DNA of 63,750 bases, filler included, from Octopus bimaculoides (lineage: Eukaryota), in NCBI RefSeq assembly GCF_001194135.2. It is 6 parts of 6 records of this genome, joined end to end, with 100 filler letters (N's around TTAATTAATTAA, not from the genome) between each part and the next. Parts side by side here need not be neighbours in the genome. Positions count along the whole stretch, not along the records: positions 23,878 to 41,795 come from NC_068991.1; 5 more parts are not named here. One strand, written 5' to 3'. The translations under genes and the position numbers were made by a program. The notes beneath the pieces were generated by a model. The model had not been told where the DNA came from. It was given only the letters and a program-made list of their open reading frames with translations, and made no database searches. Position 1 is the first letter of the stretch, and each line of letters starts with the position of its first letter. Below are positions 23,878-41,738 of this stretch, one piece after another.

Positions 23878-23950
23878 CCTAACCGTAATCCTAAAACTAA
23901 TCCTAACTCTAAAACCCGAACCCTAACCCTAAAACTCTAAAGCTAAAACT
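23878..23950 (-). repeat. Degenerate telomere-like (CCCTAA)n tract
   Basis: cctaaccgtaatcctaaaactaatcctaactctaaaacccgaaccctaaccctaa. Adjacent to a gap. Confidence 0.7.
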
Positions 23951-25964: not shown

Positions 25965-28140
25965 GTGATACCTCGCAGTACGAGTTTAATTAGTTCCATG
26001 ATTGAGCTCGTTTGACGATTTACTCGTTTTACAAATCAATTTTCCCCATTGAAATGAATTAAAATGTAATTAATCTCTTCCAGCCCATCCATGAATAATT
26101 TTCCTATGGATTTTAAAACAGAAAAGGTGCAGTTACAAGGAAAATGACAATTATAAAAACATAATAAAAGAGAATGCAAAAGAAATATGTAAACTGGTTG
26201 GTACTTTTTGGTTATCTCACCCCCATTAAAAAATTGCCATTAAAAACTGGGTTATCTCACCACTAAAAAATTGAATTTATGTGGCGACGAGATTGGATTA
26301 AAGGTTAGATCCTTTTGATTCAATACTTCAACACATTGTTGACGTTTGACCTCCTCAAGGCATGAGATAACTGAAAAGTACCGATTATTGTTTGGAAGGA
26401 GAATCTCCTTCCATTAAGACTCCAGGAAGAACAGTTTCTGGCGTTTTCTGTCACACTTCACTTAATTTAGGCTTTTGGGACACGCTTTCTTCACTTTTCA
26501 CACTTCCAGGTTGTTACATTAGAAACATATCAAGAGAAGTCTGCTTTTTCCTGCCTTTCAAAATGTTACAAAAATGCGCCAGAGTGTTGTCATTAAATAA
26601 AGCAGCTGCACGAACTGTAGATACTTTTTCAGGTTGATATTTTTCTACAAATTCAGAAACATACTGCCTTTATGTCACTCGTAGAGATAGCCTTCTTCGC
26701 TACACTCTCTTCCTCCAGGGAGTCAGTCTCTTCCACCGCATCCGAATGCTGCTGCTCCTGAAGCTGCAGAAGTTCATCTGTCATCAGCTTCTCTGAGTGC
26801 CAGGCCATATTGGTGATTTTCAGGCAGTTAGAAATGTTGTAGTTCTCCTTCCAAAACTCACGAAGGGTAAGATTTGTATTTTGGGTTTTTGGTGTACGAT
26901 GTCTTAAAATTAGAAATCACCTTTTGGTCCATGGGCTGCAAGATAGGGGTGGTGTTTTGCATGAAAGGTCTAGAACTTTTGTAAATCTAAATTCGTCCAG
27001 GATATCATCTTCGAAGTTTGTAGTGTAAGCAGGAGCATTGGTGAGAATAAGGAGAGCCTTGAGAGGAAGATTGTTCTCCAGAAGATACTTTTTCACTGCT
27101 GGTCCGAAGATAAGGTTGACCCACTCGTTGCAGAATTGCCTGGTGACTCGGGCTTTAACGTTTACCCACACCCCCCACGACCTGCAGCTTCTCCTTCAGG
27201 ATTTTGTGCGACTTGAATGCTCGTGAGTTTTCGGAATGGCAGAGAAGGAGCGGCTTAATCCTCAAGTCTCTACTCGCAATGGCACAAAGAGTTAGTCTAT
27301 CTTTCATAAGCTTGTGGCCTGATGTTTTCTTCTCTGCAGTTAGGTTCTTCTGGGCATTCGTCCCCCCCCCCAAAAAAAAACCCCGCCAGTTTCATCACAG
27401 TTGAATACCTGTTGTGCGGTGTGCTCCTCTGCTGTGATGAGCTGCGTAATTCACGTACGAAATCCTCAGCTGCCTTCGTGTTGGAACTTGCAGCTTCTCC
27501 ATACCTGATGACACCATGAACACCAGTCCTCTTCTTGAAATTATCGACCCTGCCGCGACTGGCCTTAAAATGCGTCTGCTGATGTCTCCTCCGTTGATGT
27601 TCCAGGGTTCTGCTTCAAGAGATCCCAATACAGCACTCGTGCTTTCTCACTGATGATGGTCTCCGTAATCGTACCCCCTTCGAGTTACTTCTCGTTGATC
27701 CACAGAAGAAGCGATTTTCCCATCTCTTCTTGGACAGATGTGCGTTGCTTGGAGAGACTAGAGACACCATTTGCTGTAACGGCCTTGATCTCGTCCTTTT
27801 TCTTCAGGATGGTGCTGATCGTCGACGTGTTTTGGTCGTATTAACGTGCTATATCCACTACATGCACTCCTTTCTCATGTTTATCACTGATTTCAATCTT
27901 CAATTGTATCGTAATCAGTTTATTCTTCTTCTCAGCACTGTCCTTTGCATTAACCTTCTTAGGACCCATGGCTAACGCAACTAATTATTATAAAATAATA
28001 GCAAATACTATACAAAACTAAAAAACAAAACAAAAAACACTTGGAAAACGCAACAGGGATGTGCGAGTTCAGCGCTGACTAGTGATTGCTGGTATGAAAC
28101 TCCTTCGTACTTCAAGACAAAAATTCGCACGAGCCCTGGC
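25965..28140 (-). mobile_element. Tigger/pogo-like DNA transposon (CENP-B HTH plus DDE_1), decayed
   Basis: ATG at 27969 gives MGPKKVNAKDSAEKK..ITIQLKIEI. Further motifs: FKASRG..DNFKKRTG, QQVFNCDETG, MKDRLTL, HSENSRAFK, LPLKALLILTNAPAY and KQTSLDMF. There are stops and frameshifts, and the ends are approximate. Confidence 0.88.
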
Positions 28141-29172: not shown

Positions 29173-30133
29173 GTATTTCTAATTTTTCAATTTGTCTTTT
29201 TTTTTTTTATGCTTTTATTTTTGACCTTTGTTTCTATAATCTTTGTGGTCTCAATAGCTCTACTATTTGCTTCCCAACCATGTCATCTTGGGTTCAGTCC
29301 CATTGTGTGGCATCTTAGAGGCAAGTGTCTTCTACTATAGCCTCAGGTCAGCCAAAACCTTGTGAGTGGATTTGGTGGACAGAAACTGAAAGAAGTCCAT
29401 TGTGTATAGGTGTGCGTGTTTGTGCATACCCTTGTCCTGACATCATGTGATGGTTGTAAATGAGGATCACTGTCATACAGGTGATGTTAATTTCTAGTCT
29501 TCCATTAAAATCCTGTATGGCCATGGTCCAGTCTTATTTCATTTGGAAACAGGTGAGGGTTGGCAATAGAAAAGGCACCTCAACAAATTCCATCTGACCC
29601 ATGCATGCATAGAAAAGTGAATGTTAAATGATCCTTCCTGAGTCATAAGGCTGGTTTCCTAGTTTTTGTGGCATATACAAGGGGCTGCTGAATAGTTCTT
29701 AGCTTTGGCTAAAAGAAAATACAGGAGGATCAATTATAATTTTTCCCAGCATATTCCTCTCTCAGATTCACATACTTATTGCAGTGGTCCTTCTAAGCCC
29801 TGTGAAAGAACTCAGAAGGTTGGACCTCCAACCTGGCCTTTTGCAATACCCTTAAAGCCAGGAGCTTATCAGCACCCCCTTGTATATTCCTCACTGCACG
29901 GGATGCCAGTCCATTACAGGATTACTCATTTTTGCCAGCTGACTGGACTGGGGCAATGTGAAGTAGTGTTTTGCTCAAGAAGACAACATGTCATCAGGTC
30001 TAGGAATTGATTACGAGTCCCACACCCCAACCACTAAGCCACATACCTTCATAAGTGAATGTTAAAGGATGCTGATGATGATGACAACACATAAACTCAC
30101 ATTTTCACACACAACATTCTAACAAAACATTTA

Positions 30134-31752
30134 TTAGGTTGTCCAGAAAGTTCTGAGCGTTTTTAAGCTAAATCTTTTAACGCTTCATTGAACACACCTG
30201 AAACAAAACACAGTTAAAACTTAGATGTTGCTTGAAGTGGTAGTGTATTTCTTTGTTGCTTACTAAAAATAGATTTATCTTTCATTCTGGTTACCCTTTA
30301 TTGACATTTGAAATGGATGACCAAAAATTTCATATTCATGTTGTAATGCTTTTCTTTTTAAATAAGAAAATGCTGCAAAGATTTGCGTAAACATTTGTGA
30401 AGTTTATGGTGACGATACTATTGGTGAATCAACTGTTTGAAGGTGGTTTGCAAAATTTAAAGCTGGAGAGTTTAGTTTGGGGGATGACAGTCCCAGTAGA
30501 AGATCTTAAAAATTGGATGAAGCTGTTTTGAAGGCAAAAATCGAAGAAACTCAAATAGCACAACTAGAAAACTTACAGAAGAGTTGGACGTTTTTTAAAA
30601 GTATGGCTCATGAATAGCTAGTGAAGCTAGGATACATTTCTTGTTATAAGATATGGGTCCCTCACAAACTCTCAGAAAAGAATTGTTTGGACTGGTATTC
30701 CGTTTATGATATGCTTTTGAAACAAAATTAAAGCATTCCTTCTTTTTGGAACAACTTGTGAGTGGAGATGGAAAATGGATTGTGTACAAAAACGTAATGC
30801 GAAAAAGATCCTGGAGTTTGAGTAAGGATCCCTCAAAACAGCAAGCAAAGATGAATCTATGCCAAAAAAGCTATGCTTTGTGTTTGGTGGGATCATAAAG
30901 GCATTATCTATTATGAGCTTCTCCCACAAAACCAGACCATTAATTCTAATGTGTACTATTGTCAGCTGGCTAATTTGAACCAAAAGATCTAAGAATTGAG
31001 ACTGGAGATTGTCAACAGGAAAGGGGTAATGTTCCAACAAGACAATGCCTGACCACATGTCTTCGGCTACCCAAACAAAGTTACATGAACTTTGCTGGGA
31101 TCTCTTATCCCATCCACCATATTCTCCTGATATTGCGCCATCCGACTACCACTTGTTTTTGTCTTGACAGAACTCATTGCAAGGAAAAACATTGAACAAT
31201 TTAGATAGTCAAAATGCATCTAGATAACTTTACTTCAAAACCAGTCAAATTTTGTTGAAGGAATATTTGAATTACCTGATAGATAGGCAAAAGTCATTAA
31301 TCATCATCATCATCATCATCATCATCGTTTAACGTCCGCTTTCCATGCTAGCATGGGTTGGACGATTTGACTGAGGACTGGTGAAACCGGATGGCAACAC
31401 CAGGCTCCAATCTAAATTTGGCAGAGTTTTTACAGTTGGATGCCCTTCCTAACGCCAACCACTCAGAGAGTGTAGTAGGTGCTTTTACGTGTCACCTGCA
31501 CGAAGGCCAGTCAGGCGATACTGGCAACGGCCACGCTCGAAATGGTGTCTTTTATGTGCTACCCGCACAAGCCAGTCCAGGGGCACTGGCAACGATCTCG
31601 CTCGAAAATCCTACGGAAGCCAGTCAGGCGGTACTGGCAACGGCCGCGCTCATTAATGGAAATTATTTCATTGAATAAAATTTATTGAAAGGTCAATTAT
31701 TTCTATCTCTTTTTGCATATTAAAAACGCTCAAAACTTCCCAGACAACCTAA
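30134..31752 (+). mobile_element. Full-length but dead mariner (DD34D) element
   Basis: 32-bp TIRs TTAGGTTGTCCAGAAAGTTCTGAGCGTTTTTA with 4 mismatches. Motifs MLCVWWDHKGIIYYELL, VMFQQDNA*PH and HPPYSPDIAPSDYHLF. It lies inside the NDUFB11 intron. Confidence 0.93.
31302..31649 (-). mobile_element. RTE-type 3'UTR insertion nested in the mariner
   Basis: (CAT)n tail and an 8-bp duplication TCATTAAT at 31294-31301 and 31650-31657. Same family as 45700-45950, 48740-49200, 58930-59400 and 60985-61217. Confidence 0.85.
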
Positions 31753-36749: not shown

Positions 36750-38387
36750 CACTGATTTACAAAATTTTCAATTTGCTCTGAGGCAAGGATGTGAATAGGT
36801 GTTTTTTTTTTTTTTTTTTAACTAATTTTGATGTGGTGACTTCAATTTTCTGAACAGAATAGATACAGAACATAGATGGAACTAAATTACTTGGATAATA
36901 CAATACATATAAATCATAGTACAGCAGAGAGTTTTTGTGTACACGATCTTGTGTACTTTACCTCCGGGATGTTACGCAAGAGCATCCAGCAAAAGCCCCC
37001 ATCATGCTGGAGTTCCACTTGTCTTGGTAGTTACTATTCATCTTAGTAATATCTTGGTGGAACTTTTCTCCATGCTCATCACTCACTGTTCTGAGCTTCG
37101 GAGGGAAGAAGTTGTGGTGGGAGGGGAGAAAGTGAATTTTGAATGACATTCGGCATCCCATATCCTCATAAGACTAACAGCTTCCTGATGCACTCTTGGT
37201 AATCTAGTATCCGTGTGTTACCAAGGAAGCCAAGGCGAACTGACTTAAATGTTTCCCTTGTTCTCAGTTCCTTTTATATAAAAAGCTCCTCAAAGTCCTT
37301 ATCCTTCAACACCTCTTGAATCTGAGGTCCGATGAAGATGCCCTCCTTCAGCTTAATAGAACTCAGAGCTGGGAACAGAGTGCACAGGTGTTGGAAGGTA
37401 GTGCCATTTTTGTCCATGGCCTTCACGAAATTCTTCATTAAACCAAGCTTGGTATGAAGAGGAGGAAGAAGCACCTTGTCCATGTCCACCAGAGGATTTT
37501 CTCGGCCTCTGTGTTCACCAGGCATGAAAGTGCTCCTAGATCCCCAGTTCTTCTGCTTGTAGTGCTTGGACACAGCCCGATTGTCTCAGAGACAGAGAAA
37601 GCAACAGTACTTTGTTGAAGCTCGCTTGCATACCCATAAGGAGCCCAATGACCTTGAGGTCCACTAGTACTAGTTGTACTTGACAGCTTCCAAAAGGAGC
37701 TCCATATTGTCATACAACTCCTTCAGATGGACTGAGTAGGCAATGGGAATGCCGGAGTATTTATTCCTATTGTGCTGGAGTACAGCCTTCAGACTTCGTT
37801 TGGAAGAATCTATAAAAAGATGCCAGTCTGAGAGATTGTGTGGGAAACCAAGGAAGGTGAACAAGCCAGAGACATTTGTGCAGTAGCACTCCATGTCGAA
37901 GAATGAAGCAAAGTCCTGGTTCCATGTCCTGAAACTGGTGACCCTTGCCTCTGCCTTGACCAGGTTCCACTGCTTAAGTCAGATGCCAGGAGCTCTGACT
38001 GCTGCTTAGATAGATACGAATCACGGACAAGGTCATTCAGGATTTGTCCTGTTCTCCAATTTTACAGTCAAAATAATGAGAGTAAGCCGTTCTCAGGAGG
38101 AAAGTAATTGTTCAGTGTTGTTCAGTGTTGTGCAACTCTCACACGTAGCAGAATAAATTTGCCTTGTTGATGCACCCTCGGTGTTTTGAAGTCATTGTAG
38201 AGATATGTATCATATGTATCACAAAAATCTGGAAAACAAAATAAGAATTGATCATATACATGGTTACATGAATTGTCGCGAAATCATAATGTAAATCTCG
38301 AAAACTAGAGGTGATGAGTGAAAACTGGTTTTGTATTTGAAATCAACACTATTTTTATGTTTGCCTCAATTTCTCTGTAAACCAGTG
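36750..38387 (-). mobile_element. Chapaev3-like (CMC superfamily) DNA transposon, decayed
   Basis: CACTG termini (CACTGATTTACA and rc CACTGGTTTACA). Motifs WHLFIDSSKRSLKAVL, LLPPLHTKLGLMKNFVKA, KLKEGIFIGPQI and MSFKIHFL.SH...VSDEHGEKFHQDI. The superfamily label is from recollection of these motifs. Confidence 0.75.
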
Positions 38388-39323
38388 TAGTAAACAAAAC
38401 GCTAATTAAATGATGTCTTAAAGGAAATTTGTTATAAGAGAACGAAAATGTATCAAGTATTCGAAAACGAATTTTCTTTTATGTTCAAGACTCGATAACA
38501 TGAAAAAAATGAGGAAAGTAGGAAGAAATGGTATATTAAGGCTTGTATTTTGCAAGTTCTGTGTATCACGTGATACATATGACATATTTTCCTGGTATCC
38601 ATGCACATCATATACGATACATATTCTCAGTTTTTTCATCCTCCTGAGTAACTTGGTATTTATGAAAGGAAAGCTTTATATTACTCAGAACGTATGAAAG
38701 AAGGGCTAACTAAAAGTCTGAAAACAAGCATAGATGTTACAGGCAAAGGTATGAAAATGCTTTCGCCGAGCAAAGGAGTAATTGTAGGTACTAAGAGTGT
38801 ACATGAAATGAAACAACTGCAGCCAGGAGTTTATAAATCATGTTGAATACTCCAGTTGGAATATTCAAAATATTAAATCATATTTGTTTTAAATTTGAGC
38901 ACAAGGTCAGCAATTTTAGGGGTAGGGAGCTAGCCGATTTCAACAGGCCCCAGTGCTAAATTGGTACTTGTTTTATCGACCCCGAAAGAGTGAAAGGCAA
39001 AATCTACCTCGGTGGTATTTGAACACAGAACGTAAAGAACCGGAAAAAATACTAAGCATTTTGTCCAACGTGCTAACAAGTCAACCAGCTTGTCATCTTA
39101 AAAGATTTTTTCTGCTATAGGCACAAGGCCTGAAATTTTATGAGGTGGGGATTAGTCAATTATTAGGTTGTCAAGAAAGTTCTTGCGGAATTTTTGATTT
39201 TGATTTTAAATGATGTATTTTAAAAAGTTAAAGAAGTGATTTTAAATTCTCAATCGCAGAATAATGCTAATAATATAGCCTGAACGGATAAACTACCCCT
39301 ATTTTGCAGAGAAAAGTGTAGGT

Positions 39324-39398
39324 GGCTAGCTGTGGACTCGAACTCACATTCCCGTGATTATATGTCACGATGCTTTGACCGATTAAGCTAAACTACCC
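39324..39398 (-). tRNA. tRNA-like sequence, second copy (TAT at the anticodon position)
   Basis: Inverted paralogue of 39637-39711 with loop CATATAA. Confidence 0.5.
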
Positions 39399-39636
39399 AC
39401 TACAAATTCGTCTGCAAATTAAGATATATAAATCTCGCTTTATGAGACGCTCTCATATGTTAAATTCAAATTACGACAAACGTAAATAAACAAACAAAGT
39501 TTGCTTTTAGAAGCGTTGAGATGTCTTTTAGAAAGTTAAAGAATTGATTTTTAAATTCTCGTAATTTGAATTTAACATATGAGAGCGTTTCATAAAGCGA
39601 GATTTATATATCTTAATTTGCAGAGGAATTTGTAGT

Positions 39637-39711
39637 GGGTAGTTTAGCTTAATCGGTCAAAGCATCGTGACATGTAATCACGGGGATGTGAGTTCGAGTC
39701 CACTGCTAGCC
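39637..39711 (+). tRNA. tRNA-like sequence (TGT at the anticodon position; probably not a functional tRNA)
   Basis: TAGCTTAATCGGTCAAAGC D arm, CGTGA-CATGTAA-TCACG anticodon arm and GTGAG-TTCGAGT-CCAC T arm with one base missing. Position 33 is A rather than U. Confidence 0.5.
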
Positions 39712-40790
39712 TCCTACACTTTTCTCTGCAAAATAAGGGTAGTTTATCCTGTTCAGGCTATATTATTAGCATTATTCTGCGATTCAGAATTTAAAATCAC
39801 TTCTTTAACTTTCTAAAAGACATCTCAACGCTTCTAAAAGCAAACTTCGTTTGTTTATTTACGTTTGTCGTAATTTGATGTATTTTAAATTAATTTTCGT
39901 TAAATTACTTTGACTTCATATATCATTTAAAGCCCATTTTTCGCTCTATCTAATCGTGTTACTCTTTTCTTTTTGAATATTTAGGCCATTTTTTCCGGAA
40001 CGTTGACTACAACATGGACAAAAAGCAAATTCGCACAATTTTCTTATTCCAGTTCAAGCTAGGCCGAAAGCTGCTGAAACAGTTCGCGATATCAACGATG
40101 CGTTTGACCCAGGAAGCACTAATGAACGTACAGCACAATGGTGGACGAGAGTCATGAAGATGATAAGCGTAGTGGTCAGCCATCGGATGTTGACAACGAT
40201 CAACTAAGAGTCTTAGTGGAAGCCAATCCACGCACAACTTGATTGCTTCTGAATTGGATGTAACGTATACGATAATTTCCAACCACTTGAAAGAGATTGG
40301 AAAAACAAAAGTACTTGAGAAATGGGTGCCGCATGAGTTGAACGACAACCAGAAAAAAAAAAAAAGAAAAAAAAACGCCGTTTTGAAGAGTCGTCTTCTC
40401 TTCTTTTACGCAACAAGAACGACCCGTTTCTCGACCGGATTGTGACTTGCGATGAAAAGTGGATTCTTTACGACAACTGGTGACGCTCAACTCAGTTGTT
40501 GGANNNNNNNNNNNNNNNNNNNNNNNNNNNNNNNNNNNNNNNNNNNNNNNNNNNNNNNNNNNNNNNNNNNNNNNNNNNNNNNNNNNNNNNNNNNNNNNNN
40601 NNNNNNNNNNNNNNNNNNNNNNNNNNNNNNNNNNNNNNNNNNNNNNNNNNNNNNNNNNNNNNNNNNNNNNNNNNNNNNNNNNNNNNNNNNNNNNNNNNNN
40701 NNNNNNNNNNNNNNNNNNNNNNNNNNNNNNNNNNNNNNNNNNNNNNNNNNNNNNNNNNNNNNNNNNNNNNNNNNNNNNNNNNNNNNNNNN

Positions 40791-40833
<43 letters not shown>

Positions 40834-41738
40834 CACACATGTGTGGTAAGACGCTTGTTTCTCAACCACATGGTTTCGGGTTCAGTCCCGCTGCGTGACA
40901 CATTGGGCATTTATCTTCTGCTATAGCCTTGGGCCGATCAAAGCTTTGTGAGTGGATTTGGTAGACAGAAAGTGTAAGAAATCCATCGTGTACATACATA
41001 CATACATACATACATATCAACGTGTGAGTGTGTGTGTGCATGTGCATGTGTTTGTCTCCCCCCGCTTGACAACTGGTGTTGGTGTGTTTGTTTCCCCGTA
41101 ACTTAATGGTTCGGCAAAAGACACCAATATAATAAGTACCAGGCTTAAAAAAAAATAAGTACTGGAGTCGATTCCTTCGACTAAAGTTTCTTCAAGGCAG
41201 TGACCCAGCATGGTTGCAGTTTAATGATTGAAGCAAAAAAAATATATATACACGATGGACTTCTTTCGGTTTCCATCTAACAAATCCGCTTACAAGGCTT
41301 TCGTCGGCTTGAAACTTTAGTAGAAGACACTTGCATAAGGTGGCACGCCGTGGAAACTGAACCAAGAACCATATAGTTGGGAACCAAACTTCTTACCACA
41401 CAGCCACGCCTGTCCCTATAGAAAGAGGTAAAAAAGGGAGAAAACCATAATTTATAACTAAACAAGGCCACTGGTGCCCCCCCCAAAAATGTGGTAAAAA
41501 ATGCGATTTGTAGGTCAAGTATTAAAAACATAAAGCCTTTTTTCTTTTATAGTCTACCAGAAAAATAAAAAGAAAGAAAGAAAGGAGTAATTTTGCTTCA
41601 GCTTTCACAATATAATTAACATTCCACTTAACTGGAAAGAACAGTTGATTCATGTGTCTTTCCCTTGGAAATTTAGAATTAAATTACTTTGAAGTACGTC
41701 TGTTTTATTTATTCAGTCAGTGCTGTATTATTCTCAAG

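What the first reader, a model, noticed from the sequence alone, without database searches (positions are those of the whole stretch)
39211..39889. Inverted, circularly permuted dimer of a ~308-bp tRNA-bearing unit inserted into a mariner
Seen: the left part (39224-39560) is about 1.1 units, with AAGTTA recurring at 39225 and 39533 (period 308). The right part (39561-39878) is one full unit on the opposite strand starting at a different point of the same circle, with GTAATTTGA recurring at 39561 and 39870 (period 309). About 250 bp can pair at about 96% identity around an 86-nt loop. A 14-bp duplication (TGATGTATTTTAAA) flanks the insert, and the target resembles the unit (GATGT.TTTTA.AAAGTT). 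Inference: two different permutations in opposite orientation with a long duplication suggest retrotransposition from a circular or multimeric RNA with twin-priming-like inversion, as known for Penelope pLTRs and retrozymes. Here the cargo is a tRNA-like module and I see no hammerhead, so this may be an undescribed non-autonomous retroelement class.
Basis: partly seen in the sequence, partly recalled or inferred. Interest (0 to 1): 0.8.

Follow-up and report, generated by a model that had tools for sequence, protein, structure and literature searches.

The report
Inverted retroelement dimer in octopus mariner
A dead mariner transposon in an octopus genome carries a real, old insertion of a roughly 308-bp repeat with a tRNA-like module, laid down as two opposed copies; this looks like the usual footprint of reverse-transcriptase-driven insertion, probably by a Penelope-like element, and not a new class of element.

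Summary
Positions 39225-39559 carry about 1.1 units on the minus strand and 39556-39875 carry about 1.04 units on the plus strand. The unit is 308-309 bp and the arms are about 96% identical. Each arm has a tRNA-like module. An exact 14-bp repeat flanks the insert.

Seven paralogous mariner copies from Octopus sinensis, O. bimaculoides and one ENA assembly carry that 14-mer only once. It is therefore a true target-site duplication.

The left duplicate matches the unit in register at 11 of 13 bases (p about 2e-5). This is what twin priming predicts.

I found a second, truncated copy in O. bimaculoides. It also has an inverted 5' arm, it sits in a (TA)n microsatellite, and its 3' end lies within 9 nt or less of the window copy's 3' end.

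No hammerhead or any other Rfam ribozyme is present.

Best reading: a target-primed, 5'-inverted retro-insertion of a multimeric transcript from a dispersed, non-autonomous octopus repeat family. The tandem-plus-inverted layout, the (TA)n target and the lack of a hammerhead match Penelope-like (Naiad-type) integration. A circular RNA template is possible but not needed. The mobilising enzyme was not identified, and no genome-wide census could be made.

The parts
39163..39190 (+). 5' inverted terminal repeat of the host mariner, which is the insertion target
   Evidence: It is a unique match in the window. It aligns to the ITR of paralogous mariner copies in L001-L008.
39211..39224 (+). Left copy of the 14-bp target-site duplication TGATGTATTTTAAA. 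It also looks like the top-strand primer, because 11 of 13 bases match the unit in register.
   Evidence: D8, D3. The site is present once in seven paralogous mariners. The in-register match has p about 2e-5.
39225..39559 (-). Inverted (antisense) arm of about 1.09 units. It runs without a break through the unit boundary ...GTAATTTGA|ATTTAAC...
39321..39398 (-). tRNA-like module of the inverted arm, anticodon TAT
   Evidence: ARAGORN. Rfam tRNA 32.6 bits.
39556..39560 (.). Inversion junction. TTCTC can belong to either arm, giving 4 of 5 bases of microhomology.
   Evidence: D11. Alignment.
39561..39875 (+). Direct (sense) arm of about 1.02-1.04 units. It ends at ...CGTAATT(TGA), where TGA is shared with the target-site duplication.
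39637..39714 (+). tRNA-like module of the direct arm, anticodon TGT
   Evidence: ARAGORN. Rfam tRNA 26.3 bits, below the cut-off.
39612..39737 (+). Leader/trailer stem (TTTGCAGAG...CTCTGCAAA) that encloses the tRNA-like module
   Evidence: I6. With its flanks the fold has z = -3.7 and -4.3, against 0.1 and -1.2 for the tRNA-like part alone.
39720..39723 (+). TTTT lying 5 nt after the tRNA-like module. It is the only run of four or more T on the sense strand of the unit and looks like a Pol III terminator.
   Evidence: The same site is T6 in the O. bimaculoides copy.
39876..39889 (+). Right copy of the 14-bp target-site duplication
   Evidence: D8..
40016..40503 (+). N-terminal half of the mariner transposase pseudogene. 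It has frameshifts and is cut by the assembly gap at 40504-40790.

Best explanation
The insert is one old retro-insertion made by target-primed reverse transcription into the 5' UTR of a decayed mariner in an octopus genome.

The template was a multimeric RNA, with a circular RNA less likely. It came from a dispersed, non-autonomous repeat of about 308 bp that carries a degenerate tRNA-like module.

Proposed steps:
1. Staggered nicks 14 bp apart opened the target.
2. The bottom-strand end primed a cDNA at the unit's ...GTAATTTGA end, using 3 nt of microhomology. This cDNA ran about 320 nt and became the direct arm.
3. The top-strand end ...GATGTATTTTAAA-3' annealed to the internal RNA site CUAAAAGACAUC, matching 11 of 13 bases. 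It primed a second cDNA of about 335 nt, which became the inverted arm.
4. The two cDNAs were joined at TTCTC.
5. Gap repair produced the 14-bp duplication.

What is shown: the anatomy, the true target-site duplication, the microhomologies, the absence of a ribozyme, and a second copy built the same way.

What is inferred: the RNA intermediate, twin priming, and the enzyme. I consider a Penelope-like (Naiad-type) reverse transcriptase/GIY-YIG endonuclease the most likely driver (about 0.35), ahead of a LINE.
For: - The 14-mer occurs once in seven paralogous mariners from O. sinensis, O. bimaculoides and ENA assembly ERZ21867824. It is therefore a real target-site duplication, of a length typical of target-primed reverse transcription.
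- The left duplicate continues in register into the unit with 11 of 13 matches, p about 2e-5 (D3). The two mismatched bases carry the mariner's sequence, as expected if the target DNA itself was the primer.
- Both arms exceed one unit, and the inverted arm crosses the unit boundary. The template was therefore multimeric.
- The ends of the insert are not inverted repeats of each other. This argues against a cut-and-paste element.
- A second copy lies in O. bimaculoides at L006 11711-11946. Its 175-nt sense arm is 93% identical to the unit and ends at ...CGTAATTTGAATTT. It also has a 61-nt inverted 5' arm. (TA)n flanks it on both sides, and the outer end of the inverted arm again falls where the unit (CTATATTA) resembles the target.
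- PMC8557442 describes Penelope-like insertions as partial tandems that often have an adjacent inverted 5'-truncated copy and variable target-site duplications. It reports that Naiads prefer (TA)n, lack hammerheads and occur in Octopus spp. as old remnants. It also describes non-autonomous Penelope-like derivatives with head-to-tail insertions.
- The arms differ by 3-4% in both copies and the two copies differ by 7%, which fits old events.
Against: - Only two copies were seen. About 220 kb of other cephalopod DNA gave just one.
- No sequence link to any Penelope-like element or LINE 3' end was shown. The only reverse-transcriptase element in the fetched loci looks like an ordinary LINE, because its upstream ORF ends in an endonuclease-like motif; this is my reading of the translation and no domain search was run.
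- The window target is AT-rich unique sequence, not (TA)n.
- There is no poly(A) or simple-repeat tail.
- Classical twin priming on a single RNA needs a template of about 2.3 units here. In the O. bimaculoides copy it would need a 61-nt duplication, which a snap-back explains more simply.
- The scaffold comes from a gapped assembly, so tandem units may have been collapsed.
Confidence: 0.55

Rival explanations
1. The unit is an ordinary tRNA-derived SINE, or a SINE-derived tandem repeat, mobilised by a LINE reverse transcriptase. On this reading the 5' inversions are L1-style twin priming that happened to occur in both copies sampled.
For: - A tRNA-like module is present.
- There is a 14-bp target-site duplication.
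- The two copies have nearly the same 3' end.
- LINE-type reverse-transcriptase genes are common in the fetched octopus loci.
Against: - The tRNA-like module is not at a fixed 5' end.
- It is followed after 5 nt by TTTT, or T6 in the second copy. That run would stop a Pol III transcript before it reached the body of the unit.
- There is no A-rich or simple-repeat tail.
- Both arms are longer than one unit.
- Two of two copies being inverted, and one sitting in (TA)n, fits Penelope-like elements better.
Confidence: 0.2
2. Unit-length circular RNA was copied by rolling-circle reverse transcription. The tRNA-like module stands in for the hammerhead as the processing and ligation signal, which would make the element a hammerhead-less analogue of a retrozyme.
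For: - Each arm is slightly longer than one unit and has a different start phase.
- The overlap at the start of the inverted arm is identical to the direct arm.
- The unit RNA is moderately structured, with z = -2.3 to -3.3.
- Animal retrozymes are 170-400-nt tandem units, are circularised by a tRNA ligase, and have target-site duplications longer than 4 bp (PMC7229834).
Against: - No ribozyme of any Rfam family is found at E<=10. The two arms between them cover every circular phase. No CUGANGA core is present.
- The two ends of the inverted arm differ at 2 of 27 positions, which hints at non-identical neighbouring monomers.
- The near-coincident 3' ends of the two copies suggest a linear RNA with a preferred end.
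- There is no expression evidence.
Confidence: 0.12
3. The insert arose at the DNA level as a templated insertion. A replication fork or a break end switched template (MMBIR/FoSTeS-type) into a tandem array of the unit elsewhere, switched strand, and returned 14 bp upstream of where it left.
For: - Microhomology is present at all three junctions: 11 of 13, 4 of 5, and 3 nt.
- An inverted duplication with a flanking short duplication is typical of such events.
Against: - A second, independent locus in another species has the same topology and nearly the same 3' end. This points to a mobile element, not a one-off repair accident.
- No array of the unit lies within the 18-kb piece.
Confidence: 0.1
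4. The structure is an assembly artefact, or a foldback/MITE-type DNA transposon.
For: - The scaffold has an N gap 600 bp away.
- The long hairpin superficially resembles a foldback element.
Against: - The arms differ by 4% and are offset in phase.
- Exact target-site duplications bracket a site that is intact in seven paralogues.
- The termini are not inverted repeats.
- A 14-bp duplication is atypical of cut-and-paste families.
- A second copy is present in a chromosome-level assembly.
Confidence: 0.03

Closest known systems
Non-autonomous derivatives of Penelope-like elements, such as MRC1 of the Chlamys clade, and Naiad-type insertion architecture
   Same: - Partial-tandem (pseudo-LTR-like) structure with an adjacent inverted 5'-truncated copy.
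- Target-site duplication of variable length.
- (TA)n target in the second copy.
- No hammerhead.
- Naiad remnants are reported in Octopus spp. (PMC8557442).
   Different: - No similarity to the 3' end of any Penelope-like element has been shown.
- The unit carries a tRNA-like module.
- The window copy is not in a microsatellite.
Metazoan non-LTR retrozymes (PMC7229834; bioRxiv 10.64898/2026.07.22.740005)
   Same: - Small AT-rich unit within the 170-400 nt range.
- More than one unit per insertion.
- Target-site duplication longer than 4 bp.
- Proposed mobilisation by Penelope-like elements.
   Different: - The defining type I hammerhead is absent.
- No circular RNA evidence.
- A tRNA-like module with a T-run terminator is present.
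L1-type twin priming
   Same: - The order is target-site duplication, inverted 5' segment, direct 3' segment, target-site duplication.
- The inverted segment starts where the target's top-strand end is complementary to the RNA.
   Different: - No poly(A) and no TTTT/AA target.
- Unusually long primer homology (11 of 13).
- Multimeric template.
tRNA-derived SINEs of cephalopods (OK, OR1 and OR2, Ceph-SINEs; named from my own knowledge, not compared here)
   Same: - tRNA-like module.
- Dispersed copies.
- Target-site duplications.
   Different: - The module is internal to a repeating unit.
- A terminator follows it directly.
- No tail.
- No sequence comparison was possible.

Membership tests
Metazoan non-LTR retrozyme | A type I hammerhead ribozyme in every unit | tested here: not met
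   An Rfam scan at E<=10 over 38800-40300 on both strands found no ribozyme family. No CUGANGA core is present in either copy.
Metazoan non-LTR retrozyme | Tandem arrays of 170-400-bp units | tested here: inconclusive
   The arms are 1.09 and 1.04 units long. No longer array was seen. The gapped assembly could have collapsed one.
Metazoan non-LTR retrozyme | Unit-length circular RNA is expressed | not testable with these tools
   No transcriptome access.
Penelope-like-element-dependent (non-autonomous) insertion | Partial tandem (pseudo-LTR) with an adjacent inverted 5'-truncated copy | tested here: met
   The window copy shows it. The O. bimaculoides copy has the inverted arm but no tandem part. 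The feature is as described in PMC8557442.
Penelope-like-element-dependent (non-autonomous) insertion | Insertion bias for microsatellites, (TA)n for Naiads | tested here: inconclusive
   The O. bimaculoides copy lies inside (GT)n(TA)n. The window copy lies in AT-rich unique mariner sequence.
Penelope-like-element-dependent (non-autonomous) insertion | 3'-end similarity to an autonomous Penelope-like element of the same genome | not tested
tRNA-derived SINE | A tRNA-related head with A and B boxes at the 5' end, driving Pol III transcription of the whole element | tested here: not met
   The tRNA-like module is detected. But it sits inside a repeating unit and is followed after 5 nt by TTTT or T6.
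tRNA-derived SINE | An A-rich, simple-repeat or LINE-derived 3' tail | tested here: inconclusive
   No A-rich or simple-repeat tail is present. A LINE-derived tail could not be checked.
tRNA-derived SINE | Fixed ends among copies | tested here: inconclusive
   The 3' ends of the two copies lie within 9 nt or less of each other. The chance of that is about 0.06. The 5' ends differ.
Foldback or MITE DNA transposon | Terminal inverted repeats at the element's ends and a short target-site duplication of fixed length | tested here: not met
   The left end is AAGTTAAAG... and the right end is ...GTCGTAATT. They are not complementary, because the arms are offset by about 85 nt. The duplication is 14 bp.
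Satellite DNA | Long head-to-tail arrays | not testable with these tools
   No octopus genome search was available. There is no array in the 18-kb piece or in about 220 kb of fetched loci.

The most novel reading that the evidence does not exclude
The unit could be a hammerhead-less counterpart of animal retrozymes. On this reading, multimeric transcripts are cut to unit length at the tRNA-like module by the cell's tRNA-processing enzymes. They are then circularised by the tRNA ligase. A Penelope-like reverse transcriptase copies the circles or multimers back into DNA, leaving permuted and inverted insertions.
Probability: 0.1. Interest if true: 0.75.

Novelty: new member of a known kind. Interest (0 to 1): 0.4.

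Why it matters
If a genome-wide census confirms it, this would be a non-autonomous cephalopod retroelement family that inserts in the Penelope-like tandem/inverted manner while carrying a tRNA-like module and no hammerhead.

The locus would also be a useful natural record of how such insertions form. The target-site duplication, the 11-of-13 primer homology and the junctions are all still legible.

It would add to the evidence that hammerheads are dispensable for elements that depend on Penelope-like reverse transcriptases.

For genome annotation, the long near-perfect hairpin (about 268 bp of stem) is likely to be mis-called as a microRNA or hairpin-RNA precursor. Rfam microRNA models did hit it below their cut-offs.

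Tried and rejected
- Other copies in the 18-kb piece: none by BLAST or by Smith-Waterman tiling.
- Protein-space searches for ORFs of the unit:
  - The exact 49-aa ORF is not on record.
  - The 57-aa frame has no homologue sharing 5-residue words.
  - A full HMMER scan of 1.84 billion representatives gave only repetitive, unrelated proteins.
- DNA pattern scans with three conserved stretches of 24-26 nt found nothing. They covered metagenome contigs, viral contigs and prokaryotic genomes. These collections do not hold octopus genomes, so the result says little.
- A full-text literature search for four sequence strings of the unit gave no hit.
- I tried to fetch the whole Nup188 gene and its O. 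sinensis orthologue, to obtain the empty site of the second copy and more octopus DNA. A query made of concatenated L006 ORFs scored nothing.
- A window ORF lookup meant to identify the source record found nothing on record.
- Site-specific recombination of a DNA circle at the 13-bp homology was considered and rejected. The right junction is not in register with the unit.
- A Helitron or Helentron was rejected because a true 14-bp target-site duplication is present.
- The Rfam microRNA hits (MIR4208, MIR9563) are far below their cut-offs and only reflect the hairpin.
Full report
**1. The observation**

- Positions 39212-39559 hold about 1.1 units of a 308-bp repeat in one orientation.
- Positions 39556-39878 hold about 1.04 units of the same repeat (309 bp) in the other orientation.
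- The repeat finder pairs 39286-39479 with 39556-39749 (194 nt, 96%), 39212-39285 with 39751-39824 (74 nt, 96%), and 39466-39554 with 39790-39878 (89 nt, 97%).
- A circular-aware alignment gives 12 mismatches and 2 single-base indels in 349 columns.
- The paired stem is therefore about 268 bp around a 76-nt centre.

ARAGORN finds a tRNA-like sequence in each arm, at 39321-39398 (-) and 39637-39714 (+). The anticodons differ, TAT against TGT. Rfam's tRNA model scores them 32.6 and 26.3 bits against a cut-off of 29. They are degenerate tRNA-like modules.

The 14-mer TGATGTATTTTAAA flanks the insert exactly, at 39211-39224 and 39876-39889. Nothing else in the 18-kb piece resembles the unit.

**2. 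Host and target**

The insert sits between a mariner 5' ITR (39163) and the start of a frameshifted mariner transposase (40016 onward; HTH_48 domain).

The best protein matches to that transposase are proteins annotated in Octopus sinensis and O. bimaculoides, plus ORFs from ENA assembly ERZ21867824. The window is therefore octopus DNA.

I fetched nine loci around such mariner copies. The empty site, reconstructed as the left flank, one copy of the 14-mer and the right flank, aligns without a break across the junction in seven of them. Each of the seven carries the 14-mer once. The flanking repeat is therefore a true target-site duplication and not a feature of the mariner.

**3. Junction anatomy**

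Read in the tRNA-sense orientation, the direct arm starts at (TTCTC)GTAATTTGAATTTAAC... and ends at ...CGTTTGTCGTAATT(TGA). The TGA is shared with the right duplicate.

The inverted arm starts at AGAATTTAAAAATC... It runs without a break through the ...GTAATTTGA|ATTTAAC... boundary and ends at ...CTTTAACTTT.

- That end is followed in register by the left duplicate, which reads TTAAAATACATC in this orientation. The unit has CTAAAAGACATC at the same place.
- On the plus strand, the 13 target bases GATGTATTTTAAA match the unit's GATGTCTTTTAGA at 11 positions in a fixed register. Given the local base composition, the chance of this is about 2e-5.
- At the two mismatched positions the sequence is the mariner's, as the paralogues show. 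The stretch is therefore target DNA that resembles the unit, not unit DNA.

This is the arrangement expected if the 3' end of the nicked top strand annealed to an internal site of an RNA and primed an antisense cDNA. That mechanism is known as twin priming; here it is an inference.

The two ends of the insert are not inverted repeats of each other, because the arms are offset by about 85 nt. A cut-and-paste or foldback element is therefore unlikely.

Each arm is longer than one unit, and the inverted arm crosses the unit boundary. The template must have been a multimer or a circle. On a single linear RNA about 2.3 units would be needed.

**4. No ribozyme, and an odd tRNA context**

An Rfam scan at E<=10 over 38800-40300 on both strands found no hammerhead, twister, HDV-like or other self-cleaving family. 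The two arms between them present every circular phase of the unit. The only hits were the two tRNA matches and sub-threshold microRNA-precursor hits caused by the long hairpin. No CUGANGA core exists in either copy.

The tRNA-like part alone folds no better than shuffled sequence (z = 0.1 and -1.2). With 29 nt of flank on each side it forms a long leader/trailer stem (z = -3.7 and -4.3). The whole unit is only moderately structured, with z = -2.1 to -3.3.

The only run of four or more T on the unit's sense strand lies 5 nt after the tRNA-like module. It is T6 in the second copy. A Pol III transcript started at the module should stop there. The unit is therefore not built like a canonical tRNA-derived SINE.

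**5. A second copy**

Among about 220 kb of fetched cephalopod DNA, one further copy turned up. It is in O. bimaculoides chromosome CM046601.1, inside the annotated range of a Nup188 gene model, at L006 11711-11946.

- It has a 175-nt sense arm, 93% identical to the window unit. The arm runs from the 3' acceptor strand of the tRNA-like module to ...CGTAATTTGAATTT.
- It has a 61-nt inverted arm that forms a palindrome with no spacer (97%), centred on AGCT.
- (TA)n flanks the whole copy on both sides.
- The outer end of the inverted arm lies at the unit's CTATATTA, the stretch that most resembles the (TA)n target. This is the same logic as in the window.
- Its sense 3' end lies within 9 nt or less of the window copy's 3' end. 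The chance of that on a 309-nt circle is about 0.06.

Two independent loci in two genomes therefore share the layout: target, inverted 5' arm, direct 3' arm ending near GTAATTTGA, target. This makes a mobile family more likely than a one-off repair accident. It also suggests a preferred 3' terminus, not free permutation.

The arms differ by 3-4% in both copies, and the two copies differ from each other by 7%. The events are old.

**6. Mechanism and comparison with known elements**

The best-supported reading is a target-primed reverse-transcription event with a 5' inversion, on a multimeric transcript of a non-autonomous repeat.

The closest described behaviour is that of Penelope-like elements. 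According to PMC8557442:

- Their insertions are partial tandems (pseudo-LTRs), often with an inverted 5'-truncated copy next to them.
- Their target-site duplications vary in length.
- The Naiad clade lacks hammerheads, prefers (TA)n targets, and is present in Octopus spp. as old remnants.
- Non-autonomous Penelope-like derivatives that make head-to-tail insertions are known, for example MRC1.

Animal retrozymes are small tandem units with target-site duplications longer than 4 bp, and they are thought to depend on Penelope-like elements (PMC7229834; bioRxiv 10.64898/2026.07.22.740005). They are defined by a type I hammerhead, which this unit lacks. It is therefore not a retrozyme by definition.

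I could not show any sequence link between the unit and a Penelope-like element or a LINE. The one reverse-transcriptase element I inspected in the loci looks like an ordinary LINE; this is my reading of its translated ORFs, and no domain search was run. The Penelope-like driver remains an inference, at about 0.35. A LINE-driven event is the main rival.

**7. What could not be done**

None of the searchable collections holds octopus genomes. No census of copies, permutation points, arrays or target sites was possible.

- Protein-space searches with the unit's ORFs found nothing real.
- Pattern scans of metagenomic, viral and prokaryotic collections found nothing.
- A literature string search found nothing.
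- An attempt to fetch the Nup188 orthologue, to recover the empty site of the second copy, failed.
- The scaffold has an N gap 600 bp downstream, so additional tandem units could have been collapsed by the assembler.

**8. Verdict**

A circular RNA template is allowed but not needed.

The element is best filed as a new, unannotated member of the non-autonomous elements that insert in the Penelope-like manner. It is not an undescribed class.

The most novel reading still open treats the tRNA-like module as the processing and circularisation signal of a hammerhead-less retrozyme analogue. I give that reading about 10%.

Noticed in passing
window 38900-39160: A degenerate repeat lies directly upstream of the mariner ITR. 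It looks like a tRNA-derived SINE, and from memory it resembles a very abundant octopus SINE. I did not check it against any database.
   Followed up: no
window 40840-40999 and 41242-41402: Two copies of another SINE-like repeat lie in inverted orientation (73-81% complementary, about 240 nt apart). They sit immediately after the assembly gap and a (CT)n run (I3 and I5). The mariner's 3' half and 3' ITR are missing from the piece.
   Followed up: partly
window 40504-40790: A run of 287 N (an assembly gap) interrupts the mariner transposase. A 23-nt A-rich run at 40353-40375 also disrupts the ORF, which has several frameshifts.
   Followed up: partly
window 30128-30154: A 27-nt match (93%) to the mariner ITR region, with no further similarity. 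It is probably the end of a different mariner-type element.
   Followed up: no
window 26920-27195 (-): An ORF fragment with a weak DDE_1 (pogo/Tigger-type transposase) match, below Pfam's cut-off. Neighbouring ORFs at 27158-27646 look like parts of the same decayed element.
   Followed up: partly
window 37277-37978 (-): Two adjacent ORF fragments (...LLPPLHTKLGLMKNFVKAMDK...) look like remnants of a transposon protein but have no Pfam match.
   Followed up: partly
window 23902-23946 and 31478-31607: A 20-nt tandem repeat contains CCTAACCCTAA, which resembles a telomere repeat. A separate 65-nt tandem repeat has two copies.
   Followed up: no
window 31304-31504 and L006 39435-39634: A 201-bp stretch is 96.5% identical between the window and O. 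bimaculoides. It is another dispersed repeat, and its high identity suggests the window's species is close to O. bimaculoides.
   Followed up: no
window 39409-39627: Rfam microRNA-precursor models (MIR4208, MIR9563, MIR8007) hit the centre of the hairpin at E of about 1e-8, but far below their gathering scores. The hits are an effect of the long AT-rich inverted repeat.
   Followed up: yes
L001 14368-16542: A LINE-type element, with an ORF that ends in an endonuclease-like motif followed by an RVT_1 ORF, lies 4 kb from the mariner copy in ERZ21867824. It shows no similarity to the unit.
   Followed up: partly
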